This document shows positions 26,101 to 60,370 of a DNA stretch of 64,000 nt, one piece after another (position 1 is the first letter of the stretch; every line of letters starts with the position of its first letter). The translations under genes were made by a program, and so were the position numbers. The notes beneath the pieces are model-generated. The model saw nothing but the letters and a program-made list of their open reading frames with translations. It was not told where the DNA came from and did no database searches. The stretch lies in NCBI RefSeq assembly GCF_001194135.2, contig NC_068996.1, forward strand, positions 18,114,672 through 18,178,671. The letters are read 5' to 3'. Source of the DNA: Octopus bimaculoides (lineage: Eukaryota).

Positions 26101-26235
26101 GAGGATATTGAGAGTGCTAAAAAAGACTGGGAGTTGGCACGGCTCAAATCTCTGAAAGAAGAGGAAGAAATAAGAGCTGAATTAGAAGAAGATGAGATGC
26201 TGTTTACATATACAAGGGATGATGCATATAATCAG
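26101..26235 (+). CDS. dom: domino exon, short form used by the EP400/DOM-A-like isoform (EDIESAKKDWELARL...LFTYTRDDAYNQ)
   Basis: tgtag acceptor at 26100; internal donor CAG|gtgaaa at 26236; in phase with the exon at 35588. Confidence 0.88.
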
Positions 26236-28746
26236 GTGAAAAAATCTAAGTCTAAAAAGAATTCTGGTAACAAAAGCAATAAGAAAAAGAGTAATTATAA
26301 GAATTTTAATAGTAGGCAAAACACTTCTGATGAAAAGCTAACTTCTAGCCGTAAGAGTTCTCGAAGATCTGCTGCTAGCTCAGACATTGCTAAATCTCGG
26401 AGCAATGGACTAAGTAGCACTAGAAAGTCACTCATTAATAATAATGAAAAAGATGAAAACAGTTCAAGTCGGGGTGGGAAAATGAAGGGCATTAATTCCG
26501 TAAGATCTGAACACTCTTCACCAGTAAGCACTGGTATGTTGAAGCATGCTCTTAAGAAGGATGTTTCAAAGATTCCATCCAATCCTAGTGCCCAAAACAA
26601 GGCTACTTCAAATCAAAAAGTGCTAAATCTTAATTCCATTTCCAGTAAGAACAGTAATTCTGTAATTAACACCAAAACATCTGCTTCTAGTACTGTCGGC
26701 AATCAAAAGTTGGTAGGGTCTAAAAGAGCTAAAAAAGGAGTCGGGGCTAATAAAAAGAAGGTAGGCGGTCCTGGTAGAAAACCGGTTGGTTCAGGCAAAA
26801 AAGGTGCTGGGTCTAAGAAATCTAATACCAAAAAAGCAAACTCTAACAAAGTTGCATCTACTAAGAAGTTATCAGGTGGTGTAATATCTAAGAAATCAGC
26901 TGCTACATCAACAGTTGGTACATCCACTACTACTACTACTACTAGCAAGAAAGGGTCACAGGTAAATTCTGTTAAAAAAATTAAAGTGAATTCTAAGAAA
27001 CTGCTTAGAGCTACCCTAATAGCTCAGGAGAAACTAGCTGCTGATTTACAGGTAGCAGCCACTACGACTGCTTCAACACCTGTTCCAGTTTCTTCTGCTA
27101 GGATATTAGAAACAGCCGTAAAAGTTTCAGAACATGTAAAAGTAGAGTCGAAATCAACCAGCAAACTACCAACCAATTCAACCGTAAAAGTGTTGTCAGC
27201 AGCAGCAAAAACTACTCATACTTTAACAGTTAGCACATCTACTCAAATGGCTTGTGCCTCATCTGTTAGTACCTCTGTCACACGTGTTTTACCTGTGAGT
27301 TCTACTGGAACTTCTGTTCCACATATTGTTCCAGTCAGTGCAGCTACATGCATTGTATCTGGATCAACAGCTGCTCATGTCTGGACAACTTTAGCTCAAA
27401 AAGTACCAATTGGTCATATGGTGCCAATCAGAGCTTTAGGACAAAAAATACAGGTGCCAATGTCTGCTTTAACTCAAAAAGTACCTGTCAATACTATCAC
27501 TCAAAAAGTACCTATTTCAACTATAACTCAAGTTCCTGTGTCTGCTATTACCCAAGTTCCTATTAGTAGTATCACTCAAGTACCTGTCTCTGCTATATCT
27601 CAGAAGAAGGTACCTGTGTCAACTATAACTCATGTTCCTATGTCTGCTATTACACAGAAAATACCTGTAACTGCTGTTACTCAAGTCCCCATTACAGCAA
27701 TCACACAGAAGGTTCCTATTAAAACCTATTCTCAAAAGGTTCCTGTCACTACTATCACACAAAAGGTGCCAATTACTACAATAACACAGAAGATACCCTC
27801 TCAAAAGGTTCCCGTACCTATTGCTACACATAAGATACCTGTAACTTTTGCTACACAGAAACTTCCGGTATCTGTCTTACAGCAGAAACTTCCGGTATCT
27901 GTCTTACAGCAGAAACTTCCAGTATCTGTCTTACAACAGAAACTTCCAGTAACTATTGCAGCACAGAAATTACCTACAACTTCTCTTACTCCAAAGTTTA
28001 TAGTTTCTACTCCAACTCAAAAACTTTTATTTTCCACTCCAACCCAAAAACTATTGGTTCCAACTCAAGCACAAAAGCTATTAGTCACCTCATCAACTCA
28101 AAAGATTTTAGTATCGGCTCCTACGCAAAAACTATTAGTTGCAACCCCTACTCAAACGCATCTAGTTTCTACTGCACCAAGCCAAAAATTACCCCTGATA
28201 TCAACTCCTACCCAAACTGTGCCAGTGTCCACTATTCTTCCTAAGGCAGCAGTTACCACTTCAACTACACAGAATTGCCCGACTGTCAATCATGTCGGTG
28301 TTGAAAGTGTTTTAAGTGGTTCTCCTACAATTCCTGTTAAGTACACACAGGTTGTCCCTGCTCCACTTATCTCTATTCCAGTAACCACGGCAACGTCCAG
28401 TCCTCAGCCTTGGTCAAATCCAAATCTTGTGATACGAACCCGACGGGCTTCTATGCAAGAGTCTAAGAAGCGGGCAGATACTTCAGAGAGTGTCGATGCA
28501 GATGACAGTGTGGATAAAGAGTCAGCAGAGCATGTTATAAATGTAACAAATAAGTTGAATAATATCATTATAGACTTACCTGAAAGTCTACTTACAACAG
28601 ATACGCTAACAAATAGTGGAGGAAGTCAGATAGTGCAAATATCACATCCTAACTATAAACAGCAGAATTTAAATGGGCCAGATTTGTCCAACAAAATCAG
28701 TAGCAATTGTGTTGGGTCTGGTGACATCTTACCTGAAAATGGTTGA
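26101..28746 (+). CDS. dom: domino alternative terminal exon (read-through), SRCAP/DOM-B-like isoform: K/S-rich basic block, TQKVPV-type repeats, acidic/N-rich end
   Basis: 881 uninterrupted codons plus TGA in AT-rich DNA, in frame with the conserved exon start. Confidence 0.88.
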   Translation, partial: EDIESAKKDWELARLKSLKEEEEIRAELEEDEMLFTYTRDDAYNQVKKSKSKKNSGNKSNKKKSNYKNFNSRQNTSDEKLTSSRKSSRRSAASSDIAKSRSNGLSSTRKSLINNNEKDENSSSRGGKMKGINSVRSEHSSPVSTGMLKHALKKDVSKIPSNPSAQNKATSNQKVLNLNSISSKNSNSVINTKTSASSTVGNQKLVGSKRAKKGVGANKKKVGGPGRKPVGSGKKGAGSKKSNTKKANSNKVASTKKLSGGVISKKSAATSTVGTSTTTTTTSKKGSQVNSVKKIKVNSKKLLRATLIAQEKLAADLQVAATTTASTPVPVSSARILETAVKVSEHVKVESKSTSKLPTNSTVKVLSAAAKTTHTLTVSTSTQMACASSVSTSVTRVLPVSSTGTSVPHIVPVSAATCIVSGSTAAHVWTTLAQKVPIGHMVPIRALGQKIQVPMSALTQKVPVNTITQKVPISTITQVPVSAITQVPISSITQVPVSAISQKKVPVSTITHVPMSAITQKIPVTAVTQVPITAITQKVPIKTYSQKVPVTTITQKVPITTITQKIPSQKVPVPIATHKIPVTFATQKLPVSVLQQKLPVSVLQQKLPVSVLQQKLPVTIAAQKLPTTSLTPKFIVSTPTQKLLFSTPTQKLLVPTQAQKLLVTSSTQKILVSAPTQKLLVATPTQTHLVSTAPSQKLPLISTPTQTVPVSTILPKAAVTTSTTQNCPTVNHVGVESVLSGSPTIPVKYTQVVPAPLISIPVTTATSSPQPWSNPNLVIRTRRASMQESKKRADTSESVDADDSVDKESAEHVINVTNKLNNIIIDLPESLLTTDTLTNSGGSQIVQISHPNYKQQNLNGPDLSNKISSNCVGSGDILPENG
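27856..27950 (+). repeat. 27-bp coding tandem repeat (QKLPVSVLQ), about 3.5 units
   Basis: cagaaacttcc(g/a)gtatctgtcttaca units starting at 27856, 27883, 27910 and 27937. Confidence 0.95.
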
Positions 28747-28789
28747 TTACTCTATTAATCAAGTAGAACATTTAATTTTAAACCTGGAA

Positions 28790-29435
28790 AAAAAAATATG
28801 TATATTTGTATATGTATACATACACACATTCACCTTTCTCTGACATGTGCAAGTATATGTTATTGTATACATACGTATGTTTACTCACATGCACGTGCAC
28901 ACATGTAGTGCTTTTTACTATGGTGTGTGTATGTGTGTGTGTGTATGTAACGTCTGTAACTTGAATTACCATCTGCCAACGTAGGTACTGAATTCAATAG
29001 GAAGTTGCTCGAGATGTTAAACATTGTGGGAAGACTTTGTGATACATTTCAGATTGAAAAAACGGAGACATGCATATGTAGGCAGATACATATATATATA
29101 TATATTATATATAAAATATTTATGTAATATATGTTGTATATATTATTTTATATATATTTAATATATATTACAATATATTTGTATATTTTTACTATATCTA
29201 CACACATCACATATACATGCATATATATTTTATGCACACACATACACACATATATACATGTATTTATGTATTTATATTAATATTTGTATAGTGTGTGTAT
29301 GTGTGTGTGTATATATATAATATATTTACATATGTGTATAGACACGTATGTATATTAATTGTGTGTATATATAATATATGTGTTTGTGTGTGTATATATA
29401 ATGTACATATATACGTATGTATATATATATTAACA
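28790..29435. repeat. TA/CA/TG-rich low-complexity tract after the read-through stop codon
   Basis: Interrupted dinucleotide repeats. Confidence 0.85.
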
Positions 29436-29624
29436 TATGCAAGTTGACGATCAACTGTTGGTAAAGATTGAGAGAAAAAAAATGCAACATCTGGCAGTTT
29501 TTTGTACTGCATGTAAAAGATTTTCAGGGCTTAATGGTATTGTTGTGATATCTCAAGGCGAAGAAAAAAATTATTATGTAAGATATTTAACTCAAGAATT
29601 TTTTTTTTTCTTTTTTCTGTGAAA

Positions 29625-29700
29625 AATAAATGACTGAACAAACCTTTCTGTTGGTTATCGGCATCTCATTCCTGGTATGTGTGTTCTGTCGCTGTGTGTG
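29625..29700 (+). promoter_or_regulatory. candidate polyadenylation signal for the read-through isoform
   Basis: AATAAA at 29625-29630 after a U-rich tract, followed by GT-rich sequence. Other AATAAA hexamers occur further down (e.g. 29991). Confidence 0.4.
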
Positions 29701-32700
29701 TAAATAAGCAGGGGCACTGCTCTGATGATTCAAGGTTTTGGTGTCAACCTTTTTTCTCAACAATTAGTTCATCTCATTTCATTGGTGCATTGCAGTTCCT
29801 GGAGCTCCTCCTCTTCAACTACTTTTCCTCTTTTTTTTTTTTTTTAATCCATCCATCCATCTTTCCAACCAACCGACCAACCATCCATCCAACCATCTTT
29901 ATAAAAATGGCAACAGTGATCTATTTATCTATATATGTATATATACACACTTATGTATGTATATATATGTAAAGTACACACCATACATACAATAAATTAT
30001 ATACAACATATTATGTACACAAAATTTTAAACATATTAAGAAAATTGTTTCTAGAAAAAAAACCATTGAAATAAGTTTTACAAAAACTACTTGTGATTGA
30101 AATTGGGTTTTGAAAAAATTCATATTTTCTAATGTGCATGATTTAAAAATTACATTAATAACCACTTTTGACAAGTTTTAGAGAAGATTTTAATTTCTAT
30201 TATTGATTAATTTTAAATGGTATTTAATGCGAAATTATATTTTGTAGTTAGTCTGTTTGTATAAGATTTGATGTATTTCAGTTGCAAAAATATCTAGTAT
30301 AATACCATTATTAAACATTTGTGTGAAACTGCTAAATTGCATTTTTTTCTCAAATTATATAGTGACTATAATTTTTTCTCACGAGATAGGACTTTGGTTG
30401 GTTAAGCTTTTGATTTGGGGAAATCTTTGAAGAAAAATTTGTATCATTTGTCTCCATTGTATAGACATATGGTATAGTTATCATTTTATTAGCAGGCATA
30501 TTATTGGCTATCTTAAAGAAGGAAAAAAAAGAAAAACTGGCTTTTTAGAGAACAAAAATTTAGGTGTTTGAAATAGACAAGTAAAAATATTGAAAACAAT
30601 AATTGTATCACTGTCAATCAGTGTGTTAAATTTCCTCTCTCCTTGTCTTCCCCTCCTCCTACTTTCTTTTCATATATTAAAATCTCTCGTCTCCTGTTCT
30701 ATTAGAAAATGCTGAAATGATATCCATCTTTTTATCATGAATAAATCTCTTTAAGTTACCCCCTAAGATTGAAAACTTTTTTAAGAAATATCCAAAAATT
30801 TCTGACTAGGCACCAAATACCTTGTATCATGCTGTGCCTTGCCAGGCAGCTCCTTACACCAAGGAAATGAGATGCTGGTTGACTGCAGAATAGGTTTTTA
30901 ATAACCATATTCAGCCGTGAATCACTATATGCTCACTATATTTTATTGAGCTATAATGTGTGCTTACCAGGTACCTGTCAAATAAGCACTCGATAGCTCT
31001 TTCATTATCTACATTTTGGACCTAAGTACATTTTTGTGTTGCCATGAACATGTTTTTTTATTAAATCTTCAAATTCCCTAAAAATAATCAGTAATTTTTA
31101 TTTTATATCTTACAAAATGAATTTTAAAAAGTACCTAATATTTTCTTCATCCAGCCATATAAGCATAAATTAATTCCCATTTTATCAAATTTCAATTATG
31201 AATCTTATTCTACACTGCAAATTGCTTAGTTTATGATATTTCAAATCTGTTTAGTGAAAAATTAAATGTACAAAAAGATATAAGGATTCATGTACTGGTT
31301 GCAGATTAGTTGACTCCTTGTTTAAGTCTAGTTTCCAATCTAAAAATAACTCTTTTCCACTAATGATGTGGGCCATTAAAAAAAAAAGGCTAGACTTGTA
31401 AGCACATTTTCCCTTCTCTTTATTAAAATATCAACTAATTTGTTATGTGGACAATATAAAGCTTAGAAGTTGAAACCTATTTTTAGATGAGAACTGATAT
31501 AGAAACAGGTTTTTTTTTTTTTTCTAAACCATTTTAAAGTTACATGTAATGTTCACTGTAGAGTTTTTGAATGGTAAACAAAGATACTTTACTCTGATTG
31601 TTGCTGTTTAACCCCAGGTTTGTCCTGATGTAGACCTTGTTGATTATAATCACTTGCAACAACTTTATATTCAGAAAAGAAAGGGGGGAAAAATGGTATT
31701 TAAACTGAGATTTAATTGTTAAATGAGCTAAGAAGAAACTGGTTGTTCAACTTGATAGATAGTAGTTGAGTCTCCCTCTAATTATACCCTACTCTTAAAT
31801 AAGAACGGGTAACATTAGGAAATGTTGTCATAGATAAATCTAAGACAGTTGGCTGTAGTTGGAATACCTTAAATCATGAATCTATTTGGTCAGAAGAGGG
31901 AGTAAACAAATCTGAGTAAAAGGAGATTTCTCTAGGTCAGTCATCTTCCTGGAAGTAACAGTTAAATCACTGATCGTTCCTTGGTAGATTAGGAAAGAAA
32001 GAAAGAAAAAAAAAGAGGCAGGTTAATGTAGTCTGAAGTCAGACTTCCTTCAAAGTAAGACAGAATGGTCATGGTTGGAATATCTTTAATGATAGGTTTA
32101 TCAATTAAGTTTGACCTTGACTAAACAAGACCTGTTGTTAAAAAGAATGTCTGTGAGATGTTAGGACATTGTTAAGTCTGACACTAGAGAAGTAGCAACA
32201 CCCAAGAATACGATATATATCCTGAACGTCAATTAAGGCAATACAACTAGCAATAGCTTCACTTGTTTTATTTCTTCCTCTTTTAAAAATAGATGAAAAG
32301 TAAGATTTTAATTTTAAAATTAATATGAATTTCAAAATTAACTCAAGTAGCATTCTTTAGGGTGCTTTAGTTTTCTCCCTTTATGCTTAGAAAATGGTTT
32401 GTTTGAAGAACATAAAAAAAGGTACTTTAAAAAAATAACAAAAGCAATTCATAGTTTTAAATCTTACATAATAATATTTCACACATTTTGAGAAACATTT
32501 TGTTGAGTTGTGCCCTTGCTCATTAATTTAGATGTTGAAAATTTTGTGAAATTGTTGTGTGTTGTTTTATTTTAAAAGAGGGAAATTTTTATTTAAAAAA
32601 AAAAATGAGTTTATAACTGGCTGGAATCTAACCTGAAATCCTGCACTATATGTGCTGAAAATTTTAGTGTCATAATTGGAAGAAAGAATACCAATGTGTT

Positions 32701-35587: not shown

Positions 35588-35623
35588 GTCTATGTATGTG
35601 ACATTGATCATGAACCAATGCCT
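35588..35623 (+). CDS. dom: domino 36-nt microexon (VYVCDIDHEPMP), EP400-like isoform
   Basis: ttgcag acceptor, gtaagt donor; fills the EP400-type YVY...MP segment between DAYNQ and MWAPPTPP. Confidence 0.88.
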
Positions 35624-40715: not shown

Positions 40716-40872
40716 ATGTGGGCTCCTCCCACCCCACCCCAGGACGACAATGATGTTTATATTGATCAAACAATGTTCTTCTTATATGAACCCACCATTA
40801 TGCCGGAGACCCAGCTACCACCTGTCTACATCAGAAAGGAACATAAGCGACCCAAAATTGAAACTGTTACAA
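40716..40872 (+). CDS. dom: domino exon, EP400-like isoform: MWAPPTPPQDDNDVYID...QLPPVYIRKEHKR
   Basis: cttag acceptor, gtatgt donor; EP400 WTPPTPPQDD and LPPVYVRKE motifs. Confidence 0.95.
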
Positions 40873-41916: not shown

Positions 41917-42164
41917 ATTCGTTACTCACAACAGCTCGTAAACAGAAACAACGCAAAGAAGAGCAGTTACGAGTTCCTCGATCACTATTTGATCGTCCAA
42001 CAGCAGCACAGCTGAAGATGCGTCGTGAAGCAAAAATGCAGAAGCTTAAACATGGTTTAATTAAGAATTTCCGCTCGATATCGTCTGTGTCAAACAAACA
42101 ACCAATGGAACAGGCTGAAGAACATCCGGAATGGTTAATTCATGAAGACTGGGCTTTACTACAG
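41917..42164 (+). CDS. dom: domino exon, EP400-like isoform: RKQKQRK...VPRSLFDRP...PEWLIHEDWALLQ (start of SANT). Alternative in-frame acceptor at 41935.
   Basis: Hand-translated; CAG|gttagt donor; EP400 PRSLFDR and PEWLISEDWALLQ motifs. Confidence 0.92.
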
Positions 42165-42832: not shown

Positions 42833-43060
42833 GCTGTTCTGACACTTTTGGACTTGGCTCTGAATTTAACAGTTTTGTCTCCTGCTCGCATTGCAAACTG
42901 GGAGTTAGTTGCAGATGTTGTTAATTGCTGCAGCAGGAATTACCGATCTCCAAAGCAATGTAAAAATCGTTATGAAAATATTATTATTCCACGTGAAGAA
43001 GGCCGTGTTTTATATGATATGAATCCAAGAAAACAGAAGAAAACTAAAGGAATATACAAG
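42833..43060 (+). CDS. dom: domino exon, EP400-like isoform: SANT/Myb-like domain (NWELVADVVN...YRSPKQCKNRYENIIIPREEG)
   Basis: tacag acceptor, AAG|gtataa donor; 76 codons. Confidence 0.96.
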
Positions 43061-43153: not shown

Positions 43154-43710
43154 GGATCTTTTTTAAAACGGGGGCCACATTTTTCATTAATGTTTTACGT
43201 AGTGTTTTTGGTACCGAAAGACTTTCAAACTTTGTATACTTATCTATTTTGTGTTATAGAACAGAAAAATATTTTTGTATTCGAATTTATTTCATGTAAA
43301 AAATTGTCTTATTTCGATAATTTCAACCAATCACTGACAAGTATTCAGTTGTTTATATTTACTCCTTTGGCTGATTAAGCCATAGCTTCGTTTTATTTGC
43401 TTTTTTCATTTTCTTTTTTTTCTTTGTTTTATTTGCTTTTTTACCCTAACCCTAACCCTATCACCGATAGAATTGTTTCAGAATCGTTTGTTTATGTAGT
43501 CAGCGCTTAATGTATATCGGCTGAATGGACGTCAGTGATTGGTTGAAATTACAGAAATACGACAACTTTAACATGGAATAACTTAGGGATTTCTTTTTTT
43601 TTTAAGAAGACTAAAAGAAAAAGATGTTTTATATGACACATTCTACCAGTGTTCCAAGTTTCAAAATGTTTCGTTAATGAAAGATGTGGCCCCCGTTTTA
43701 AAAAAGATCC
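43154..43710. mobile_element. MITE with 37-bp TIRs and an internal 18-bp inverted repeat
   Basis: 43154-43190 versus 43674-43710 differ by 1 mismatch; 43321-43338 and 43531-43548 form a perfect IR. Confidence 0.9.
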
Positions 43711-43782: not shown

Positions 43783-44076
43783 ACAAAGAATAACCGACCA
43801 ATCAAAACAAGCCAGCTTTATGGGCAAGATAGCTATGCTGCTGTTACCACTCTGTACTCTGGCCGTTTTGATATGATAAAAAGTCTGGCAAATAAACGAC
43901 AGCCTCCACTAAGGCAGACTACCAACCAAGGGCAGAAGAATCCTAAACACACATCTGTGCTTCAGAGCAGTGGAATTAACTATGACTTGCCATTGGATCC
44001 AGTTCAAGTTGCTTTGATCAGAGCAGAAAGGATTCAACGAGAGAAGAAGCAGAACCAAGCTGCTGCAGCCGCTGCT
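43783..44076 (+). CDS. dom: domino exon, EP400-like isoform: TKNNRPIKTSQLYGQD...KNPKHTSVL...GINYD...RAERI...AAAAAA
   Basis: cacag acceptor, gtgagt donor; EP400 NPKHASVL, GINYD and RAERI motifs. Confidence 0.95.
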
Positions 44077-44221
44077 GTGAGTTTTCTTGTTCACTTTGGT
44101 TGTCGCTATTGTTTGTATTGGTTTGAATATTACATTTTACAGTGCAACTAGTATTTGTTACATTTCATTGTATGACTGTAGTTTGTTACAGTTCATTGGG
44201 TGAATGGTGTTTGTTACATTT

Positions 44222-45946
44222 CATTAAGTTTCCACCATTGTAGTGGATCAACTGATACAGCAACTTTTTTCTCCATTTTATATCACTGCACTTCATCAGA
44301 AGCGTTTTTGACACCCTCTTCTAAGTCTGAGTCAGACTTCATCAGTTTAATGTGCTTTTCATTAGGTTCACACATAGTTTTATTGATAGGGAGTATCATC
44401 TTGTGCATTATTCTTCAACTGGTCATCATTAACATCAACTGCTATTTGTTGTCCAATAAGTAACCAAGTTTGTTCTTTTGAACTGTCTGATAAACACTTC
44501 AAGTTTTTATATCGTGGATCAAGTGCTGTTGCAATCTGTAATAATATCTCAATACTTTTCATGTCAGCTACATGTTTGCTGAAGTCATTAACAGATACTG
44601 CCTTGAATCTAGCTATATAACCTGGATCATCATCATTTACAATCATGTGCTTTGTCAAAGACAATAACAGTGGCAATGCAAAGTTACACGACACATATTT
44701 TTCACCTCCCAAGCAGGACCATAACCTGATAAAATAAATCTAAAACGTTGATGTATTTTGAAATCTTTTCCCAATCAGAATCGAACAGTTTTAGACCTTT
44801 ATATTGCTTCTCTTTGTCTGGTGATGATTGCTTCTCTGGCCTGCAGCAGACTCTTTAGCATTAGTAAAGTACTGTTCCATCTTGCTGTAGCTTACACAAT
44901 AGTGAATCACTACAATTCTGCAATCCCGTTGTGTGGATAGGGCTTTGTTTAAAATGTCCTATGATTTTTTCAACATTTAACAAACAATGTTTCTGTATCT
45001 GCGGCTTTAAACCCATGCAATATGCTCAACTGCAGACTATAAGCCCAACATGGAATATGAGCAAAACCAGTTTGGTTAGCAGCTGAAACCAAATTTTGTG
45101 CATTGTCTGTTTCTAGAACCTGAATCTTCTTTGTTATATCCCAGTCTTTTACAAATTGTTTATATAACTCAGCAACATTGTTAGAATAGTGACACTCAAC
45201 AACATGCACACATTCAAGAATAACACTTATTAAAATTCCGGTCATCAGCAATCCAATGGCCGGTGATTCTGCAATAACTTTCATTACCTAGGAATGTCCA
45301 AAAATCAGATGTTAGTGCAATTGCCTTTGAATTTTGCACTGCTTCTTTAACCCTTTCTCTTTTGCTGTTATAAATATCAGCCAACAGTTTATCAATAGTG
45401 CACTGGCAAGCTACTTTATATTTGGTATTTTGAAGTGCTGTACGCAATACTTGCCGAAGACCATCATCTTCTACAATTAATATTGGTCTGTCGCTATTAG
45501 CTATCCAGATTGCAAGTGATATTTTAATGTGACATTGTACAGTAGCTCTCACCGGATGATCAGACCGATGATAAAACTGACTCAAAATAGTCTGCTTGGA
45601 GGTAGGTGACACCGCCGCTGTAGACTGACTAAATGAAGCTGACTTTGCAAGCTGAGGTTTTAAATACTGTAGCAAGTGTTTGTTTTGAAGTAAGTGTTAT
45701 CAGCGGTTTTGATATTGCTGTCAGCCAACAATTTAAATGCAAATTATTCATGTAATCGACCTGATAAAGGTTTATATTTCATAACTCGCTTCTTCTCTGC
45801 TGCCATTTTACTGTCGTTATTATTGCTTCCTGACTTCTGGCACATTTATTAATGATGGGTAGAAAATTAAATTTGAAACCGCTTAATAAAAATTTTATAG
45901 CTAAAATAAATTAACGATTAATTAATCTTTAAGTTCCACAGCCCTA
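44222..45946 (-). mobile_element. decayed hAT (Ac-group, ZBED-like) transposon, one end retained
   Basis: RPILIVEDDG, ALTSDFWT, TDNAQN, CWAYSLQL, LDPRYK, DPLQWWK motifs; TAGGGCTGT terminus at 45946. Confidence 0.9.
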
Positions 45947-45982
45947 AAATATATATATATATATATATTTATTTATAGTATC

Positions 45983-46150
45983 TGTGTTTGTTCCCCCAAC
46001 ATTGCTTGACAACCGATGCTTAGTGGTTCAGTGAAAGAGACCGATAGAATAAGTACTAGGCTTACAAAGAATAAGTCCTGGGATCAATTTGCTTGACTAA
46101 AGGCAGTGTCCCAGCATGGCCACAGTCAAATGACTGAAACAAGTAAAAGA
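45983..46150 (+). mobile_element. 3' half of the same SINE as 1254-1634
   Basis: Visibly near-identical to about 1445-1634 (gagaccgatagaataagtactaggctt...ccagcatggccacagtc). Confidence 0.85.
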
Positions 46151-46198
46151 ATATATTTATATTATATATGTATATATATATATGCGTATGTGTGTATA

Positions 46199-46249
<51 letters not shown>

Positions 46250-46338
46250 ATGATTGACCGTTGACTGGACACTATTCAATTTTTTTTCTCCGTGTTTTTC
46301 TCCTTGTCTCCGTATTCTTTCTGTTGAAGAGCGTAGCT

Positions 46339-46810
46339 NNNNNNNNNNNNNNNNNNNNNNNNNNNNNNNNNNNNNNNNNNNNNNNNNNNNNNNNNNNNNN
46401 NNNNNNNNNNNNNNNNNNNNNNNNNNNNNNNNNNNNNNNNNNNNNNNNNNNNNNNNNNNNNNNNNNNNNNNNNNNNNNNNNNNNNNNNNNNNNNNNNNNN
46501 NNNNNNNNNNNNNNNNNNNNNNNNNNNNNNNNNNNNNNNNNNNNNNNNNNNNNNNNNNNNNNNNNNNNNNNNNNNNNNNNNNNNNNNNNNNNNNNNNNNN
46601 NNNNNNNNNNNNNNNNNNNNNNNNNNNNNNNNNNNNNNNNNNNNNNNNNNNNNNNNNNNNNNNNNNNNNNNNNNNNNNNNNNNNNNNNNNNNNNNNNNNN
46701 NNNNNNNNNNNNNNNNNNNNNNNNNNNNNNNNNNNNNNNNNNNNNNNNNNNNNNNNNNNNNNNNNNNNNNNNNNNNNNNNNNNNNNNNNNNNNNNNNNNN
46801 NNNNNNNNNN
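46339..46810. other. assembly gap (N)
   Basis: 472 N upstream of the Tc1-like fragment. Confidence 1.
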
Positions 46811-47355
46811 CCAGACTGCCTTCTTCCAACTGTTAAACATGGAGGAGAATCTGTGATGATCTGGAGGGCTATATTTTGGAAATCCTCCAGTCCAATGGTT
46901 TCCCTTCATGGCAGAATTAATAATCAAGACTATTTAAGCATTTTATCTGATCAAATTCCTCCTATGGTTGCGGAACTGTTTCCAGAGAGAAACGCAATCT
47001 TTCAGGATGATAATGCACCAATTCACACAACTAAAGTTGTTACTGAATGGCATGAGGAACATTCTAGTGAAGTTGAACAATTTATCTGGCCACCACAGTC
47101 CCCAGATCTCAATATCATTGAACATTTATGGTGCATTTTAGAAAAACAAGCAAGGAGTCGATATCCTCCAACATCATCACTACAAGAACTGGAGACTTTT
47201 TTTAGCTGAGGAATGGACAAAACTTCCTTTGGAAACAATTCAAACTTTGTACGATTCCATACCTCGTAGAATTTAAGCTGTAATTACTGCCATAGGTGGT
47301 CCTACCCCATATTAAAATAAATTCGTTTGCAATTTTAAGGTGTTTCCATTATTGT
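46811..47355 (+). mobile_element. Tc1-like transposase 3' part, DD36E spacing
   Basis: FQDDNAPIH...WPPQSPDLNIIEHLW; in-frame stops; ends GGPTPY*; 5' part lies in the N gap. Confidence 0.92.
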
Positions 47356-48179
47356 CCATGCTGGCATGGGTTGGGTGGCTTAACTAGGGCTGGTAAGCTG
47401 GAACGCTACACCAGAGTATAAATGCGTGCTTTTACATGCAACCAGCACGGTTGCTCTTTGTGTGATACTGGCATCTTCCACAACTGCGATTGTGATTAGC
47501 TTGATGGGTCTTCTTCTCAAGCATGGCTTAATGCCACAGGTCTCGGCCATTGCCTCCATGATGCTCAATGCTTGAAATGACAAAATAAGTCATTTGAAAT
47601 TTGAGAAAATAGTCTGTTGAGGAGCACTAAACTATAATTATACCCCATATTTTCCCTTTGTGGTCCCTTCTATTTTCTTTACTTTAAAATTAATAAAGAA
47701 TAACTATACAGTAAATTGTGGAAATGATATTCAACAAAGAACCATGTGTAGGGTTGGAAGGAGTAAGTGTCTCAGAATAACTGTTCCTACATTATAGAAA
47801 TAGGAGAGGGGCCTGGGAGAAAATTTGGAAAGAAAGGAAAAACCTGAAATTTTGTCAGTCTTCTTTCCCTTTCTGCCTACCAAGTGTGTGTGTGTGTGGT
47901 TAAACAGATGTTTAAAATGGAGATAGGAAGGTACTTATTTAAAGCAGCATTGAAAATAGAGGTGGTGATTACTCTTTTTGCTTCTCAATTTACTGAATTC
48001 AGAATAATGATGTCTCATGAGAAGGATTTGTCTTCTGCTTACTTGTTTTTGTAAAAATTAGGTTTTCTAAAAAAAATTTCTTTATAAAAGTTTGAATGTT
48101 TTTTTAAAAATATTTTTAACAATGTGTCTCTAGAAGCTGTTTAATGAATTAAGATAATTAAATACAATCAAAATATAAT

Positions 48180-48239
<60 letters not shown>

Positions 48240-48291
48240 TTGTGTGCATATCATTGTCCATTCAATTGATGTTTTGTTGGTATTGATACAG

Positions 48292-48552
48292 CATGTTTCA
48301 ACTGAGCAGCAGTTAGCCCTACAACGCGCACAACAACCTGGCCAAGTTCAAGGTCAAGTTACCCAACAACAGCAGCAATCACAGCAACAACAACAACAAC
48401 AACAGCGGCAACAACAACAACAACAGCAGCAAGTTCCACAGGTGGTTGCTGCTGCTGCAGTAGCGACTCCCCCTACACACGTGTCTCAGAATGTAGCAGC
48501 AGTCCAAGCCCAGCAACTTCAGTCTCTCACCAATGTCTCCAGTTCAGTTATG
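48292..48552 (+). CDS. dom: domino exon, EP400-like isoform: poly-Q region
   Basis: tacag acceptor, ATG|gtaagc donor; CAA/CAG runs; phase 0-0. Confidence 0.9.
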
Positions 48553-50317: not shown

Positions 50318-50324
50318 TGCACAC

Positions 50325-55098: not shown

Positions 55099-55326
55099 TT
55101 AACCCTTACGTTACCAACCTGGCTGAAACCGGCTCTGGTTCTGAGTACAAATGTCTTGCTTTCATAAGTTTTGAATTGAAATCTTCCACCAAACCTTAGT
55201 CACTATTTATGTTCGTAACACTAGCTGAATGATAGCGAAGTTATTTTACTAAATTCTTTGTTATATTTAAAGTAATTGAAAGAAACACTGAGCATCTCAA
55301 CAGAAATATGATGATAAAAGGGTTAA
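55099..55326. mobile_element. TTAA-flanked MITE family B (partial copy at about 8762-8880)
   Basis: TTAACCCTTACG...AAAAGGGTTAA; 228 bp; interior differs from family A. Confidence 0.75.
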
Positions 55327-55597
55327 AGGATTTAGTCAATAAATTAACTGCAGTGCTTATTTATTCTTGTGGTCTCTTTTTTCATGAAATCACTAGGTTA
55401 GTGTTAAATGATGAGATACAAACATGCAAATGCACACACAAACACTCAAGCTTCCATACAGTTTTCATCTGAAAAACTTACTCATGAGGCATTGCTTGAC
55501 CTTGGGTTAATGTACACAGTGGGACTGAACCCCAAACCATATTGTTACTGAGTAAACTTCCTAATGACAGTGCCATGCCTGAATAATTATTATTATT

Positions 55598-55815
55598 AAG
55601 GTGGCGAGCTGTCAGAATCATTAGCATTCTTGGCAAAATGCTTAGCAGTATTTCGCTTTTCTTTATGTTCTGAGTTCAAATTCCATCGAGGTTGACTTTG
55701 CCTTTCATCCTTTTGGGGTCAATGCATTAAGCATCAGTGAAACACTGGGGTTGATGTAATCGACTAGTCCCCTCCCCCAAAATTTCAAGGTCTTGTGCCT
55801 TCAGTAGAAAGGATT
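55598..55815 (+). mobile_element. second SINE family (tRNA-like head; central domain resembling Meta/MESC by recall), full length
   Basis: gagttcaaattcc B-box; gaggttgactttgcctttcatcc core; (ATT)n flanks; many copies in the window. Confidence 0.8.
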
Positions 55816-55929
55816 ATCATTGTTATTCGTGAGATTTGTATTGTTTGCTTTCATTGCATAACCAAGCACAGCTTTGTGTCTTGAGTATGTGCAGTAGTCT
55901 GTTTTTTTTTGTTGTTTTTTTTTGTTATT

Positions 55930-56330
55930 GTAATTGTTTTGAAAGTGTGCTGTGTTCCTAACAGTGCTATTTTCTGTGTGGTATTTCATTTGTTCTGAGG
56001 TTGTGGTTATGTATTTGTCTGCATGCTTGTTTATCATTCCCAAATCACCTGTTATTATAGGGATTGTTTCTGTTTTCAGGCCCCCATATTCGGGTTACCT
56101 CTATTTCCAAGTCTTTATATTTAGATACTTTCTCCATCTACTTTAACAATACATCAGTATTGGGACTGATATATGAGACATTCCTTTTTCTGATCATCCT
56201 TGAAAACAATATCCGGTTGCTTAGCCCTGATCTGAGACTGTTGCCTTGCTTTTTCAGTAGGCATTTTCTAGTGTATGTTGTACCATCTCTTTTCTGATAT
56301 TTCATAATGCTGGCATAACTACTTGTGTAT
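55930..56330 (-). mobile_element. R4/Dong-like RLE LINE 3' fragment
   Basis: Hand translation across frameshifts: AKQPDIVFKD...SKYKDLEIEVTRIWG...QKIALLGTAH. Confidence 0.72.
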
Positions 56331-56949
56331 ATTATTATTATTATCATTATTATTAAAGTAATGTTGCAACACAATTGTTAGCATGTCAGATAAAAAATAC
56401 TTGGTGGCATATCTTCTGTTTTTATGTTCTGAGTTCAAATTCTGCCAAGGTCAACTTTGCTCTTAATCCTTACAAGGTTGATGAAATAAGTACCAGTTGA
56501 GCACTGGGGTTGATGTAATTACATAGCTCTCTTTCCCCAAAAAATTTCAGGCAAGAAACCATTCGAGCATTGTCGATGCCAGTACTGTCTGACTGACCTT
56601 CGTGCCAGTGGCAAGTAAAAAGCACCCACCACACTCTTGGAGTGGTTGGTGTTAAGGAAGGGCATCCAGCTGTAGAAACTTTGCCAGATTGGATTGGAGC
56701 CTGGTGTAGCCATCTGGCTTGACAACTCTCAGTCAAACCGTCCAGCCCATGCTAGCATGGAAAGCGGACGTTAATCGACGATGATGATGATGATAACTGA
56801 AAACAAAAACTCACTCGCTTACTCACCTTCTCTTGTTTCAGGCCATAGGTCATAACCTGGCTAAGAATTGTATAAAAGACACAAGAAAGAAGGAATAATA
56901 ATAATAATAATGATGATGATGATGATGATGATGAATACAAAATGTAGCT

Positions 56950-57415
56950 AAGTTTGTCCACTGGAGATAGTGTGAGAAGTATGGTCTTGAAAGAACACAA
57001 ATAATATGGGTATAAGCCAGAAGACATCACTGAGAATAATGAGTCTAAACTCATATGGGGTTTTATAACCCACTGTGACTCAGTGGTTGATGCTTGGAGA
57101 CCAGACATAGTTGTAGTGGATAAAGGGAAGAAAGAAACCAAGATCATAGATATTGCCATACCTAGGGATGCTCAAGTGGGTGACAAAGAGCCCAAAAAGA
57201 TTGAAAAGAACAAGCTACCAAAAGACAAAATTGCACAAATGTGAGCAATGAAGAAAGTAACTGTTGTCCCAGTAGGGTCACTGGGAACAATAACAACCAA
57301 GTTTGAATTATATGTCAGAAAAACTGGAATTGACAGAAGGGTAGACATGCTTAGAAAACTTCTTTATTGGGGATGGTGAGGATTTTTGAGATTGGTACTT
57401 GGGTATTAAGTATCA
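56950..57415 (+). mobile_element. R4/Dong-like RLE LINE 3' fragment
   Basis: KFVHW...RPDIVVVDK...IIDIAIPRD...KIEK...VVPVGSLG (PD-D/ExK nuclease). Confidence 0.78.
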
Positions 57416-57544
57416 TGGAAAGATACCCTATGAGACCTTTGACAACGGGTTGTTGTCTGCTTTACCAAAATTAACTGGAGCAAGTGAAACCAAAAGTTCT
57501 GAGAGGTGAAATGGAAATAATAATAATGATGATGATAATAATAA

Positions 57545-57930
57545 AAGCCCGAATGCAGTACCAGGCAGTGGCTCTATCATGTACATTGTTTTGTCTTTGG
57601 TATAAAAGATGGGCTACAGCAAATATTTTGCTCAATACCACAGATTTGCTTAACACTTGTCTGACCTTAACCAGTTGAGCATGTCCCTTGGTGGCTGACG
57701 ATATGTGCATCTCTGATCATGAGCAGAAGTAGTGGGGGAGCATCATAGCCATGTGTTGAGAGGAATTCTTTGGGGTTTGAATAATTCACCTTTGGAAACA
57801 TGGGTGTTTTGCTCAACATCTTTAAACAACCCTTATTCAGGGACCTTTTGAGCGGGATGGGCTACTGGACCTGAAGAAAATTCTAACTGGGCCCCACCTG
57901 CGAGGTCATGCACTGTTTATTTCGATTAAT
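57545..57930. repeat. unclassified interspersed repeat
   Basis: GC-richer block resembling a common octopus repeat by recall; no second copy in the window. Confidence 0.4.
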
Positions 57931-57947
57931 ATAACTGCTCCTGATTT

Positions 57948-58585
57948 AGGCACAAGACCAGCAATTTTCAGGCAGGGTCTTAATCAATACTGTCAACCTC
58001 AGTACTTGACTTATATTCTATTTTATTGACCCCTGAAAAGATGGAAGGTTGGAGTTGATCTCATCACATAAAAAGCTGCAAGGCACTTTAGTGATTCTGC
58101 AAATCTGCTTCCGATAAAAATAATAATAATAGCATTACTTTTTTTCTATAGGCACAAGGCCTGAAATTTTGTGAGAGGGAGCTAGTTGGTTACATTGACC
58201 CAGGTAGTCAGCAGGTACCTACTTTATCAACCCTGAAAGGATGAAAGGCAAAGTTGACCTCAGTGGAATTTGAACTCGGAACACAAAGACAGATCAAATG
58301 TTGCTAAGCATTTTGCCCAGTGTGCTAACAATTCTGTCAGCTTGCCACCTTGATGATGATAATGATTTCAAGTTTTAGCACAAGGCTAACAATTTTTTTT
58401 TGGGGGGGGGGGGCGGATAAGTTGATTATATCGACTCTAGTGTTTAACTGGTAGTTATTTCATTGAGCCTGAAAAGATGAAAAGTAAAGTTGACCACAGC
58501 AGAATTCAAACTCAGAACATAAAGACTGGTGGAATGCTGCTAAGTGTTTTGCCCAGCATGTTAAGTTCTGTCAGCTCACTGTCTT
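57948..58585 (-). mobile_element. three stacked copies of the 55598 SINE family (about 57948-58110, 58150-58351, 58365-58585)
   Basis: Repeated gcacaagg...gaaaggatgaaaggcaaagttgacc...gaactc units separated by AAT/GAT repeats. Confidence 0.8.
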
Positions 58586-60163
58586 CACAATAACAACAAC
58601 AACAACAACATTAATAATAATCTTACAAATATTTGATGAGTGAAACTATTTGAAGTAGGGCTATTTTTATTGGTCTAATTTCTTTTTGCTTTGGCGTTCA
58701 TGGAAAATATCAAATAGAGAGGTCTGTTTACCACATTTGTATAATAATATCAAGAAATTGTGAGTTCCAAGGGAACTTCAAGATCTAAACATTAAGATTG
58801 TTTTTGTTTACCATCATAGTTGAATAATTTTAAAGCAATATGTATGAAGAATGAATTTTATCTAAGACATCTCAATGCTTCTAAAAGCAAACTTTGTTTG
58901 CTTGTTTACGTTTGTCGTAATCTGAATATATATATATCCATATATATCTTACATCATGATTGCAATATGTGTGTGTGAGAGAATGCATGTTCACAAAAAT
59001 ACTTAATATATATTTTATCAAGGTGTAATATATCCATAAAGGAAATGTGCTCATGACTTGTTCACTGGCTCAAATTTTACTTCAACTACCTTTGTGTCAT
59101 ATCTCAGGGCAAAATCTATAACCATTTAATAATTATAACTGAAGGAGAGAGAGAGAGAGACCTGTGTGTGTTTTCTTTCCAAATCTTCATGTATTTGGGG
59201 ATCAAGATAGCAGAATATGGTTGTGGTTGTTATATAGTTTTGGTGTTATTCGTGGCTAGAAGGTAAAGGTGGAACATGAACTGGGAGATGATAGTTCCAG
59301 ATAAGTAGTTTGGAATAATATTTATGTTCTAAGGGATGAGACATGAAAGGACTAACTTTGATGTTGAGTTATGTTACTGGATGACCATGAAACTATAAAG
59401 ACAATTGGTGAAATAATTAAAATAAACTCTTTACAACAATGCTAGGAACTAAAACTGTGTGCATATGCACACACACACACACATATATATATATATTGTA
59501 GTTGTTAAAAAAAGATGTTCACCTAGTATTGGAATAAGGTTACTCTTAATAAGGATGAGGGTATTTATAATAAAAGTAATGAGGAGGGTTAAAAATTATA
59601 ATTTTATTTCATGTATTTATGTGCTTTATTTTGAGTTATGAAAATTAATTTTGATTTGATTTTTTTTTTTTAAATCTTGAAGTCTTTTATTTGCATGCTA
59701 ATTGTACAATGTTTATTATATTGTTGTCATGGCAATATGATTTATTTGTTTATTTAATGTCTTTATTGAAAGCTTTTTGTTATTTTGGTATTTTTGTATG
59801 CATATTTGTGTACCAAATGTTTATAAAACCTTGGAACAGTTTTCATTCTTTAGAACAAATATAATTAAATTATTTTGGTTAAAAAAAAACAAGATGAAAT
59901 TTGGTGTTCTTAGTGGAATGTTATGTACATTAATTATTCAGAGTAATTTTTGATAAAATATTGATTGCTGTAATTGCATAAACAGTAGTCAGCATGCATT
60001 TTTACTTTAATTGAAATTGAGATAGTACTAAAAAAATACATTTAAAAGCTTGATTACCAGAATTGCTATAGCTGTGTGTTAGCTGTTCCATGACTTTATA
60101 TAACTGTGTACACGTTTCAATATACCCATGCTGTGTCATTTTCTGTCATTACCGTCCGTACAG

Positions 60164-60370
60164 CAGACAGGACTGTTACAGAAGGCTGATGTTGCACCTT
60201 TAGCAGGAGTGAGGCCAACTTCAAAGGCTGTGTCTATCTCATGTCCCAAAGGAAATGGTAGAAGCATTTTCATCAACACCACTGGCGGCACGGCATCCAC
60301 AAATACTTTTGCTGCTTTCAACAAGCATATATCACAGAGTCTCTCAAACAATCCCCAAGCCACTAGAGTT
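60164..60370 (+). CDS. dom: probable domino exon, EP400-like isoform (QTGLLQKADVAPLAGVRP...PQATRV); NAGNAG acceptor 60164/60167. Gene continues beyond the window.
   Basis: Pyrimidine tract plus cag, gtgagt donor; GC-richer open frame, phase 0-0; little recognisable homology. Confidence 0.72.

What the first reader, a model, noticed from the sequence alone, without database searches (positions are those of the whole stretch)
26101..60370. One mollusc gene appears to encode both SRCAP-like and EP400-like remodellers via a splice-or-read-through switch
Seen: the exon at 26101 has an internal weak donor (CAG|GTGAAA, no +5 G) just after TYTRDDAYNQ. Ignoring it yields 836 more open codons and a stop at 28744. 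Using it joins, in phase, to exons 35588, 40716, 41917, 42833, 43783, 48292 and 60164, which encode WAPPTPPQDD, a SANT domain and poly-Q. Established: vertebrates use two genes (SRCAP for H2A.Z deposition, EP400 in the TIP60/NuA4 complex), while Drosophila domino makes DOM-A (SANT, poly-Q, Tip60) and DOM-B (H2A.V loading) from alternative C-termini. Inference: the two-complexes-from-one-gene design is shared by a lophotrochozoan, so it may be ancestral to protostomes or bilaterians. I do not know of a description in cephalopods.
Basis: partly seen in the sequence, partly recalled or inferred. Interest (0 to 1): 0.9.

Follow-up and report, generated by a model that had tools for sequence, protein, structure and literature searches.

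The report
One gene, two remodeller tails (domino-type)
This mollusc gene makes two chromatin-remodeller mRNAs from one weak internal splice site, an EP400-like form and a SRCAP/DOM-B-like form; the fruit-fly domino gene is already known to make such a pair, and the same splice site sits at the same codon in snails, a worm and a sea squirt.

Summary
The exon starting at 26101 holds an internal donor (CAG|GTGAAA, 26235/26236).

**Read-through form.** Ignoring the donor gives 836 more codons and a stop at 28744. RNA depth there matches the neighbouring exons. The RNA ends between about 29100 and 29445.

**Spliced form.** Using the donor joins 35588, 40716, 41917 or 41935, 42833, 43783, 48292 and 60164 in frame, on single cDNA contigs. 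The gene then runs past the window. The assembly gap (46339-46810) is intronic and spliced reads bridge it.

**What the two forms resemble.**
- The shared ATPase is SRCAP-type.
- The spliced tail matches human EP400 residues 2190-2644 (E 9e-100) and keeps the TRRAP-contact residues.
- The read-through tail is disordered and basic, with no SRCAP sequence match.

**Other species.** The same donor at the same codon occurs in an annelid genome, in slug transcripts (both forms) and in a tunicate genome.

**Verdict.** This is a real domino-type isoform switch. The kind is known in Drosophila and has been suggested for arthropods. The evidence favours an ancestral bilaterian switch, later split into vertebrate SRCAP and EP400. 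That the two forms build two different complexes is inferred, not shown.

The parts
435..18584 (+). Upstream shared exons: SNF2 ATPase N-lobe (exons within about 435-4555), a long S/T/P/Q-rich insertion, and the helicase-C lobe (exons within 16286-18584)
   Evidence: Open frames read. PDB sequence search: N-lobe 625 bits to SRCAP, 471 to Swr1, 355 to EP400. C-lobe 314, 256 and 164 bits.
25798..25883 (+). Shared exon (LSPVERYAV...) just upstream of the switch exon; its start is the contig-piece start
   Evidence: Joint 25883>26101 with GT..AG ends: 38 reads in X23 and 35 in X24, plus contigs.
26101..26235 (+). Common part of the switch exon (45 codons, ...EDEMLFTYTRDDAYNQ)
   Evidence: It aligns with both human SRCAP and human EP400.
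26233..26241 (+). Internal 5' splice site CAG|GTGAAA, which lacks G at +5; this is the decision point
   Evidence: 31 (X23) and 27 (X24) reads leave here into exon 35588, with consensus agreement 1.0. The same CAG|GTGAA(A/G/T) at the same codon is found in L001, L002, L004 (Ridgeia) and L003 (Clavelina).
26236..28746 (+). Read-through coding extension: 836 codons plus TGA. It is rich in K, S, T, V, P and Q and has 27-nt (9-aa) tandem repeats at 27470-28156
   Evidence: Continuous RNA depth, and a 1678-nt contig covering 26208-27885 across the donor. Chance of the open frame about 2e-27. Tandem repeats. No Pfam or PDB match.
28408..28452 (+). Near-invariant motif PWSNPNLVIRTRRAS inside the read-through tail
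   Evidence: Present in about 50 orthologous tails, including Ridgeia, Arion, Biomphalaria and Plakobranchus. L, V, I, R, T, R and A are invariant in alignment A1. Coordinates.
28747..29445 (+). 3' UTR of the read-through mRNA, TA/TG-rich; the RNA ends somewhere between about 29100 and 29445
   Evidence: Depth about 15 at 28993-29100 but 0-2 at 29445-29597. Beyond that only T-run artefacts remain. There is no AATAAA before 29625.
35588..35623 (+). 36-nt micro-exon (VYVCDIDHEPMP), the first exon specific to the spliced form
   Evidence: Loose ends at 26237 and before 40716. Contig record positions 29-64. Equivalent 36-nt micro-exons occur in Clavelina (MFVSDISGEPMP) and L002 (MYVCDETGEQMP).
40716..40872 (+). 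Exon encoding MWAPPTPPQDD...; it matches the EP400 post-motor domain
   Evidence: Depth about 30 with introns at 0; contig record positions 65-221. Alignment to EP400.
41917..42164 (+). Exon with two acceptors, 41917 and 41935 (18 nt apart, both in frame); it ends in the start of the SANT domain (PEWLIHEDWALLQ)
   Evidence: The contigs use 41935 (record arithmetic). The raw-read consensus after 40872 is a mixture, with agreement 0.67-0.69.
42833..43060 (+). Exon encoding the core of the SANT domain
   Evidence: Joint 43060>43783: 31 reads in X23 and 11 in X24. Weak Myb/SANT Pfam hits. EP400 alignment.
43783..44076 (+). Exon encoding the end of the SANT domain and the HD (TRRAP-binding) segment
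   Evidence: Contact residues mapped.
46339..46810 (.). Assembly gap, inside intron 44077-48291
   Evidence: Reads and contigs go from 44076 straight to CATGTTTCAACTGAG..., which is position 48292. Contig record positions 973 and 974 are adjacent.
48292..48552 (+). Q-rich exon
   Evidence: Loose ends on both sides. The contig arithmetic gives 261 nt.
60164..60370 (+). Last spliced-form exon inside the window; its donor at 60371 leads to an exon beyond 64000
   Evidence: Depth about 30-65 with introns near 0. 50 (X23) and 31 (X24) reads continue with CTGTAAGCGGTAATTTGAC..., a sequence absent from the window.

Best explanation
The window holds the 3' two-thirds of a single domino-type gene. It encodes a SWR1/SRCAP-family split ATPase and makes two mRNAs from one composite exon.

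**Spliced form (shown at the RNA level).** If the weak internal donor at 26235/26236 is used, the transcript continues through a 36-nt micro-exon and at least six more exons. These encode an EP400-like post-motor domain, SANT domain, HD segment and Q-rich region.

**Read-through form (shown at the RNA level).** If the donor is not used, the exon runs on for 836 codons to a stop at 28744. The RNA ends 0.4-0.7 kb later. The product has the same ATPase but a basic, disordered tail without a SANT domain.

**Inferred mechanism.** Splicing at a suboptimal 5' splice site competes with cleavage and polyadenylation inside the following intron.

**Inferred function.** The spliced form should tether TRRAP and the TIP60 acetyltransferase module, like EP400 and fly DOM-A. 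The read-through form should act as the H2A.Z-loading enzyme, like SRCAP and fly DOM-B.

**Inferred history.** The switch predates the split between protostomes and chordates. Vertebrate SRCAP and EP400 would then be duplicates that each kept one of the two 3' ends.
For: **RNA evidence in the window**
- Junction 26235>35588 has 31 and 27 reads. Read-through depth is of the same order as the exons, and flanking introns are at 0.
- Single contigs of 1458 nt (X11) and 1565 nt (X5) chain 26208-26235, 35588, 40716, 41935, 42833, 43783, 48292 and 60164.
- Depth falls to 0-2 by 29445.

**Coding evidence**
- An open frame of 836 codons has P about 2e-27 by chance.

**Similarity to the human proteins**
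- The ATPase lobes score far higher to SRCAP and Swr1 than to EP400.
- The spliced tail matches EP400 residues 2190-2644 at E 9e-100.
- Of the 11 EP400 residues that PMC11995519 reports as contacting TRRAP, 8 are identical (D2406, R2413, K2469, L2498, I2503, Y2505, L2509, P2511). The other 3 are conservative changes (H2397R, H2464R, I2512V).
- Human SRCAP aligns with the shared region up to the donor and then continues RRSKKAKAPE. Human EP400 continues with a micro-exon-like MEYVYEDVDGQTEVMP and then LWTPPTPPQDD.

**Other species**
- Arion vulgaris transcripts P0083 and P0084 are identical up to ...SRNESQ. They then read VKRGRKP... and MFISDVDGVEMPMWCPPTPPQDD respectively.
- The Ridgeia genome has CAG|GTGAAG, 451 open codons, and then the EP400-like exons.
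- The Clavelina genome shows CAG|GTGAAT and a 392-codon tail on one tandem copy. On the other, 99%-identical copy the tail is followed by a 36-nt micro-exon and the LWLPPTPPRDD and SANT exons.
- About 40 distinct protein clusters have read-through tails, and about 50 tails overall share WSNPNLVIRTR(R/K)A.

**Published precedent**
- Fly DOM-A and DOM-B, and the two complexes they form: PMC7239659.
Against: - No protein-level or complex-level data exist for either form in this organism.
- The read-through tail has no detectable similarity to the SRCAP C-terminus. In this window it has only a degenerate AT-hook-like GGPGRKPVG.
- No poly(A)-tailed reads were seen, and there is no canonical AATAAA between the stop and the point where coverage drops. 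The libraries are unstranded.
- Whether this genome also has a separate EP400 or SRCAP gene could not be tested.
- The Clavelina region contains a 99%-identical partial tandem duplicate, or an assembly artefact. No RNA was examined for it.
- I could not obtain the fly sequence, so I could not check that the fly switch lies at the same codon.
Confidence: 0.82

Rival explanations
1. The read-through RNA is only retained intron or unprocessed precursor and makes no functional protein. The gene would then have just the EP400-like product.
For: The libraries are total cDNA and unstranded. No poly(A) reads or canonical signal were found. The tail matches no Pfam family or PDB chain.
Against: - Other introns of the same gene have depth 0, while the extension has exon-level depth.
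- Coverage stops 0.4-0.7 kb after the stop codon instead of running on through the intron.
- An open frame of 836 codons has P about 2e-27.
- Orthologous open tails of 268-917 codons, carrying a near-invariant motif, occur in about 50 sequences.
Confidence: 0.04
2. The exons from 35588 onward belong to a separate EP400 gene with its own promoter. The 26235>35588 junction would be an occasional read-through chimera between neighbouring genes.
For: Annotators of other genomes called the downstream exons as separate genes. Examples are Ridgeia P0001, Araneus P0002 and Mytilus 'E1A-binding protein p400'.
Against: - Junction reads (31 and 27) are as numerous as the depth of the downstream exons, about 30.
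- Every contig that reaches 40716 comes from the micro-exon, and every spliced read leaving 26235 enters it.
- The first downstream exon is a 36-nt internal exon with an acceptor and no start context.
- No second ATPase lies between 28746 and 60370.
- The Arion and Mytilus proteins P0084 and P0284 join the ATPase to the SANT part in one chain.
Confidence: 0.03
3. The switch is real but arose independently in molluscs/annelids, arthropods and tunicates. This is the convergence framing in the eLife digest of PMC7239659. Vertebrate SRCAP and EP400 would then not descend from a two-isoform gene.
For: - Human SRCAP shows no tail homology and lacks the WSNPNLVIRTRRA motif.
- The tails evolve very fast.
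- No amphioxus, echinoderm or cnidarian gene was examined.
- The fly junction was not compared.
Against: - The same codon and the same donor letters CAG|GTGAA appear in five genomes from at least three phyla.
- A 36-nt phase-0 micro-exon is followed by a W-PPTPP-DD exon in octopus, in Clavelina and in L002.
- Human SRCAP and EP400 stop being alignable to each other at exactly this residue.
Confidence: 0.1

Closest known systems
Drosophila domino (DOM-A / DOM-B), PMC7239659
   Same: One SWR1-type gene with a shared HSA and ATPase. Alternative C-termini: one has a SANT domain and poly-Q, the other is shorter and has no predicted fold. The ATPase is SRCAP-like. The paper already notes similar alternative C-termini in bee, wasp, ant, beetle and a spider.
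   Different: This organism is a lophotrochozoan. The exact switch is mapped here: an internal donor in a composite exon, followed by RNA ending in the intron. Whether the fly uses the same codon was not checked. The complexes (TIP60/TRRAP versus ARP6) are shown in fly and only inferred here.
Human EP400 (TIP60/NuA4 scaffold), PMC11995519, PDB 8qr1
   Same: The spliced tail aligns with residues 2190-2644 (post-motor domain, linker, SANT, HD, QP-rich) at about 50% identity and keeps the TRRAP-contact residues.
   Different: EP400 is a separate gene with its own diverged ATPase. Here the ATPase is SRCAP-type and is shared with the other isoform. The window protein has 18 extra residues (RVLYDMNPRKQKKTKGIY) after the SANT core, and annelids have them too.
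Human SRCAP (H2A.Z-loading remodeller), PDB 6igm
   Same: It is the best match to both ATPase lobes. It aligns up to the switch point and then also continues with a basic run. Its C-terminus is long and disordered (residues 2357-3230, per 10.1101/2024.07.30.605802).
   Different: There is no sequence similarity in the tail. SRCAP has three canonical AT hooks. The window tail has none, although gastropod orthologues do. SRCAP lacks the WSNPNLVIRTRRA motif.
Composite terminal exon with intronic polyadenylation (the type seen in immunoglobulin mu secreted/membrane switching; from my own knowledge)
   Same: A suboptimal 5' splice site inside an exon competes with RNA 3'-end formation just downstream. 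The outcome is two proteins with different C-termini.
   Different: Here the poly(A) site itself was not mapped, and nothing is known about regulation.

Membership tests
SWR1/SRCAP/Domino subfamily of INO80-type SNF2 ATPases | Both ATPase lobes are closest to SRCAP/Swr1 | tested here: met
   N-lobe: 625 bits to SRCAP, 471 to Swr1, 355 to EP400, 323 to INO80. C-lobe: 314, 256, 164 and 189 bits in the same order.
SWR1/SRCAP/Domino subfamily of INO80-type SNF2 ATPases | A long insertion splits the two lobes | tested here: met
   N-lobe exons end near 4555 and C-lobe exons start at 16286, with S/T/P/Q-rich exons between them. The matches fall at SRCAP residues 610-918 and 2043-2203.
SWR1/SRCAP/Domino subfamily of INO80-type SNF2 ATPases | N-terminal HSA domain | not testable with these tools
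   The 5' part of the gene lies outside the window. The Ridgeia orthologue has EP400_N and HSA domains.
Domino-type isoform pair (DOM-A / DOM-B) | One gene with a shared ATPase and two alternative C-termini at the mRNA level | tested here: met
   Junction reads, read-through depth and chained contigs.
Domino-type isoform pair (DOM-A / DOM-B) | The long form carries a SANT domain and a Q-rich region; the other form has no recognisable fold | tested here: met
Domino-type isoform pair (DOM-A / DOM-B) | The two isoforms assemble different complexes (TIP60/TRRAP versus ARP6) | not testable with these tools
   This needs isoform-specific purification. It is shown only in fly (PMC7239659).
Domino-type isoform pair (DOM-A / DOM-B) | The switch lies at the same codon as in fly | not tested
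   The fly protein and gene sequences could not be obtained with these tools.
EP400 C-terminal module (PMD, linker, SANT, HD, QP-rich) | Sequence homology across the whole module | tested here: met
   E 8.7e-100 to 8qr1_A residues 2190-2644. EP400-named hits at about 50% identity.
EP400 C-terminal module (PMD, linker, SANT, HD, QP-rich) | TRRAP-contact residues of SANT and HD are kept | tested here: met
   8 of 11 are identical and 3 are conservative changes. The residue list comes from PMC11995519.
SRCAP-type C-terminal tail | Long, disordered, basic tail directly after the post-ATPase region | tested here: met
   Composition: K 11%, S 14%, T 12%, V 11%. No Pfam or PDB match.
SRCAP-type C-terminal tail | Canonical AT hooks (RGRP core) | tested here: not met
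   The window tail has only GGPGRKPVG (26764-26790). Orthologous gastropod tails do have RRGRPRK and ARGRPRK.
SRCAP-type C-terminal tail | Sequence similarity to SRCAP residues 2357-3230 | tested here: not met
   No hit at E<=1 for the tail and none for the motif profile. Only the first few basic residues after the donor align.
Composite terminal exon / intronic polyadenylation switch | An internal 5' splice site is used in some transcripts and ignored in others | tested here: met
Composite terminal exon / intronic polyadenylation switch | The read-through RNA ends before the next exon | tested here: met
   Depth about 15 at 28993-29100 and 0-2 from 29445.
Composite terminal exon / intronic polyadenylation switch | A mapped poly(A) site and signal | tested here: inconclusive
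   There is no AATAAA or ATTAAA between 28747 and 29624. No poly(A) loose ends were listed.

The most novel reading that the evidence does not exclude
The composite exon with its weak CAG|GTGAA donor is an ancestral bilaterian device. It let one SWR1-type gene supply both the H2A.Z-loading complex and the TIP60/NuA4 scaffold. Vertebrate SRCAP and EP400 would then be whole-gene duplicates that each kept one of the two 3' ends (subfunctionalisation), and not an independent solution. In addition, the read-through tail carries an undescribed, near-invariant docking motif, WSNPNLVIRTR(R/K)A. This motif may specify the SWR1-type complex in lophotrochozoans.
Probability: 0.6. Interest if true: 0.65.

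Novelty: new member of a known kind. Interest (0 to 1): 0.5.

Why it matters
It changes the story of how animals separate H2A.Z loading from H4/H2A.Z acetylation.

- **Current view.** The fly solution (isoforms) and the human solution (paralogues) have been presented as different evolutionary routes.
- **What this suggests.** The same splice switch at the same codon in molluscs, an annelid and a tunicate points to isoforms as the older state. The vertebrate gene pair would be a later split of that state.
- **What it predicts.** Exon boundaries in human SRCAP and EP400 should fit this history.
- **What it offers for experiments.** The SRCAP/DOM-B-like tail has a conserved short motif that can be mutated to ask what makes the two complexes different.
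- **Practical point.** Genome annotators often cut this gene in two at the read-through stop.

Tried and rejected
**Read-laying runs that failed**
- a filter tripped at 29134-29179.
- a filter tripped at 29929-29966.
- As a result, exon 35588, exon 41917/41935 and exon 48292 were never laid directly. They are confirmed only by loose ends on both sides and by contig arithmetic.

**Searches on the read-through tail that found nothing**
- Pfam.
- PDB chain sequences.
- A profile of the WSNPNLVIRTRRA motif against PDB chains, which include full-length SRCAP and EP400, gave only chance hits.
- A literature search for the motif string gave nothing relevant.

**Limits of the protein searches**
- The search for homologous proteins returned only proteins of roughly the query's length. 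Full-length named orthologues were therefore mostly missing, and one search gave no named hits.
I could not show the switch in amphioxus, echinoderms or cnidarians.

**Literature limits**
- The 2021 review by Scacchetti and Becker is not held.
- The papers I read do not give the fly exon structure at the switch.

**Other**
- Four other open frames in introns, which I suspected were transposon pieces, gave no Pfam hit.
- I considered whether the Clavelina locus shows two tandem genes, one EP400-like and one SRCAP-like, and rejected that reading. It is one complete unit followed by a 99%-identical partial copy that lacks the EP400-like exons.

Full report
**1. The observation**

The window is 64 kb, has 34% G+C, and contains two assembly gaps. 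Its + strand carries a long, intron-rich gene. The exon that starts at 26101 follows a ttgtag acceptor. Its frame is open for 881 codons up to TGA at 28744-28746. After 45 codons (...EDEMLFTYTRDDAYNQ) comes CAG|GTGAAA at 26235/26236, and 836 more codons follow. With the window's base composition an open run of 836 codons has a probability near 2e-27. The next longest open frame on either strand has 211 codons. Together with their donors they join in frame.

**2. RNA evidence**

Many public RNA runs of the same (coded) organism hold 99% of the sampled words of the read-through stretch. I laid two raw-read runs (X23, X24) and two contig sets (X11, X5) on the region.

- *Spliced form.* At the donor, 31 (X23) and 27 (X24) reads continue with CTATGTATGTGACATTGATCATGAACCAAT, which is exon 35588.
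- *Read-through form.* Depth over 26236-28758, with both strand columns summed, is about 8-68 per bin and mostly 15-45. That is the same order as the shared exon, at about 38 (X23) and 22 (X24). The intron just upstream (25951-26067) has depth 0. A 1678-nt contig runs across the donor from 26208 to 27885.
- *The exon chain.* A single contig of 1458 nt in X11 (1565 nt in X5) links 26208-26235, 35588-35623, 40716-40872, 41935-42164, 42833-43060, 43783-44076, 48292-48552 and 60164-60370. Record positions fit to the base.
- *Alternative acceptor.* The contigs use acceptor 41935, not 41917. The raw reads after 40872 are a mixture of both (consensus agreement 0.67-0.69). The two differ by 18 nt, so both stay in frame.
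- *The assembly gap.* Reads leave 44076 and land on 48292 (51 reads in X24). The gap at 46339-46810 is therefore intronic and does not affect the frame.
- *Beyond the window.* After 60370 the RNA continues with a sequence that is not in the window, so the long form ends beyond base 64000.
- *3' end of the read-through RNA.* Depth is still about 15 at 28993-29100 but 0-2 from 29445 onward, apart from T-run artefacts. The read-through RNA therefore ends 0.4-0.7 kb after its stop codon and does not continue through the intron. There is no canonical AATAAA there.
- *Relative abundance.* By depth and junction counts the two forms are of similar abundance in these two samples, roughly 1:1 to 2:1 in favour of splicing.

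**3. What the proteins are**

- *Shared ATPase.* The N-lobe scores 625 bits to human SRCAP, 471 to yeast Swr1 and 355 to EP400. The helicase-C lobe scores 314, 256 and 164 bits in the same order.
- *Spliced tail.* It matches human EP400 residues 2190-2644 at E 8.7e-100 and matches nothing else in the PDB. Database relatives named EP400 are about 50% identical. According to PMC11995519, this EP400 region holds three functional parts. The post-motor domain helps dock the acetyltransferase module. The SANT and HD segments tether TRRAP. Of the 11 listed TRRAP-contact residues, 8 are identical here and 3 are conservative changes.
- *Read-through tail.* It has no Pfam or PDB match. It is rich in K, S, T, V, P and Q and contains 9-residue tandem repeats.
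- *Where the human paralogues part.* Human SRCAP aligns with the shared region up to the donor position and then also continues with a basic run (RRSKKAKAPE). Human EP400 instead continues MEYVYEDVDGQTEVMP-LWTPPTPPQDD, which corresponds to the micro-exon and the next exon here.

**4. Other species**

- *Arion vulgaris (slug).* Two UniProt transcripts are identical up to ...SRNESQ. One then reads VKRGRKPLKK... (P0083) and the other MFISDVDGVEMPMWCPPTPPQDD... (P0084).
- *Ridgeia piscesae (annelid).* The genome has the donor CAG|GTGAAG at the same codon, 451 open codons, a stop, and 4 kb further the MWTPPTPPQDD and SANT exons. Its annotators cut the gene into a 2629-residue protein and a separate 307-residue protein.
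- *Clavelina lepadiformis (tunicate).* One tandem copy shows CAG|GTGAAT and a 392-codon tail. On the other, 99%-identical copy the tail's stop is followed after 450 bp by a 36-nt micro-exon (MFVSDISGEPMP) and then LWLPPTPPRDD and SANT exons. The copy that shows the donor is a partial copy lacking the EP400-like exons. It may be an assembly artefact.
One also has the micro-exon and the WAPPTPPQDD exon 6 kb downstream.
- *Wider survey.* An exhaustive search found about 40 distinct clusters in which the shared exon runs on as ...QVKK....
- *Named mollusc models.* Read-through forms include "helicase domino" of Biomphalaria and Plakobranchus. Spliced forms include Mytilus "helicase domino-like isoform X5" and "E1A-binding protein p400".

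**5. Comparison with what is known**

The fly gene domino makes DOM-A (SANT, poly-Q, TIP60 complex) and DOM-B (H2A.V loading with ARP6) by alternative splicing. The same paper notes alternative C-termini in several insects and a spider, and it suggests the mode may be widespread in arthropods (PMC7239659). I found no paper that extends this beyond arthropods or that proposes it as the ancestral state.

This window is therefore a new member of a known kind. Three things are added here:
- the exact anatomy of the switch;
- its conservation, letter for letter, across at least three phyla including a chordate;
- the fact that human SRCAP and EP400 stop resembling each other at that very residue.

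**6. An unexpected extra**

The read-through tails are barely alignable. Yet almost all of them contain (P)WSNPNLVIRTR(R/K)A. In the window it lies at 28408-28452. It is also present in Ridgeia, Arion, Biomphalaria, Plakobranchus and about 45 unnamed clusters. It is absent from human SRCAP and EP400. My pattern search did not find it in Clavelina or in the presumed insect tails. Its function is unknown. A docking site specific to this isoform is my best guess.

**7. Limits**

- No protein or complex data exist for either form in this organism.
- The libraries are unstranded.
- The poly(A) site is not mapped.
- The rest of this genome could not be searched for further paralogues.
- The fly junction was not compared.
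- No amphioxus, echinoderm or cnidarian gene was examined.

Noticed in passing
window 28408-28452; also L004 (Ridgeia) tail, P0083, P0163, P0265 and about 45 unnamed proteins: A near-invariant motif, PWSNPNLVIRTR(R/K)A(S/A), sits inside read-through tails that otherwise evolve fast and are low in complexity. It is absent from human SRCAP and EP400, and I found no description of it in the literature.
   Followed up: partly
window 41917 and 41935: Two acceptors 18 nt apart are both used. The contigs carry 41935 and raw reads show a mixture. The six extra residues fall in a gap of the alignment to human EP400.
   Followed up: partly
window 43158-43700 and 60688-60855 (introns): Very high RNA depth, 300-350 per strand column against 10-30 for the gene's exons. 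There are many variant positions and joints to unrelated sequence. This looks like an abundant, expressed, multi-copy repeat family rather than part of this gene.
   Followed up: no
L003 (Clavelina lepadiformis) 1-1413 vs 15602-17012, and 8821-9500 vs 17014-17666: A tandem partial duplicate of the gene's 3' half, 99.2% identical. The second copy lacks the 7.4 kb that hold the EP400-like exons. It is either a real recent duplication or an assembly artefact.
   Followed up: partly
L004 (Ridgeia) 1-6066 and 10001-13602; L005 (Araneus) 1-87 and 10001-20759; Mytilus P0158: Genome annotations cut this gene at the read-through stop. They call the downstream SANT exons a separate 'hypothetical', 'Myb-like' or 'E1A-binding protein p400' gene.
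   Followed up: partly
window 43004-43057; L004 12542-12778; L002 19841-19960: Eighteen residues after the SANT core (RVLYDMNPRKQKKTKGIY) are conserved between the window and annelid-like genomes. They are missing from the human EP400 chains in the PDB.
   Followed up: no
window 27852-27951: Three to four copies of a 27-nt unit, 95% alike, encode QQKLPVSVL repeats. This is a recent expansion inside the coding tail. RNA contigs break there.
   Followed up: no
window 19974-20359: A second assembly gap lies between the helicase-C exons (which end about 18584) and the next coding exon (about 21967). It is presumably intronic, but I did not test this with reads.
   Followed up: no
window 28814 and 28931 (3' UTR repeat region): G>A and A>G differences appear in 40-70% of reads, in sequence that also matches reads from elsewhere. 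This is more likely repeat-copy variation than RNA editing. No A>G site at 10% or more was seen in the read-through coding region in X23 or X24.
   Followed up: no
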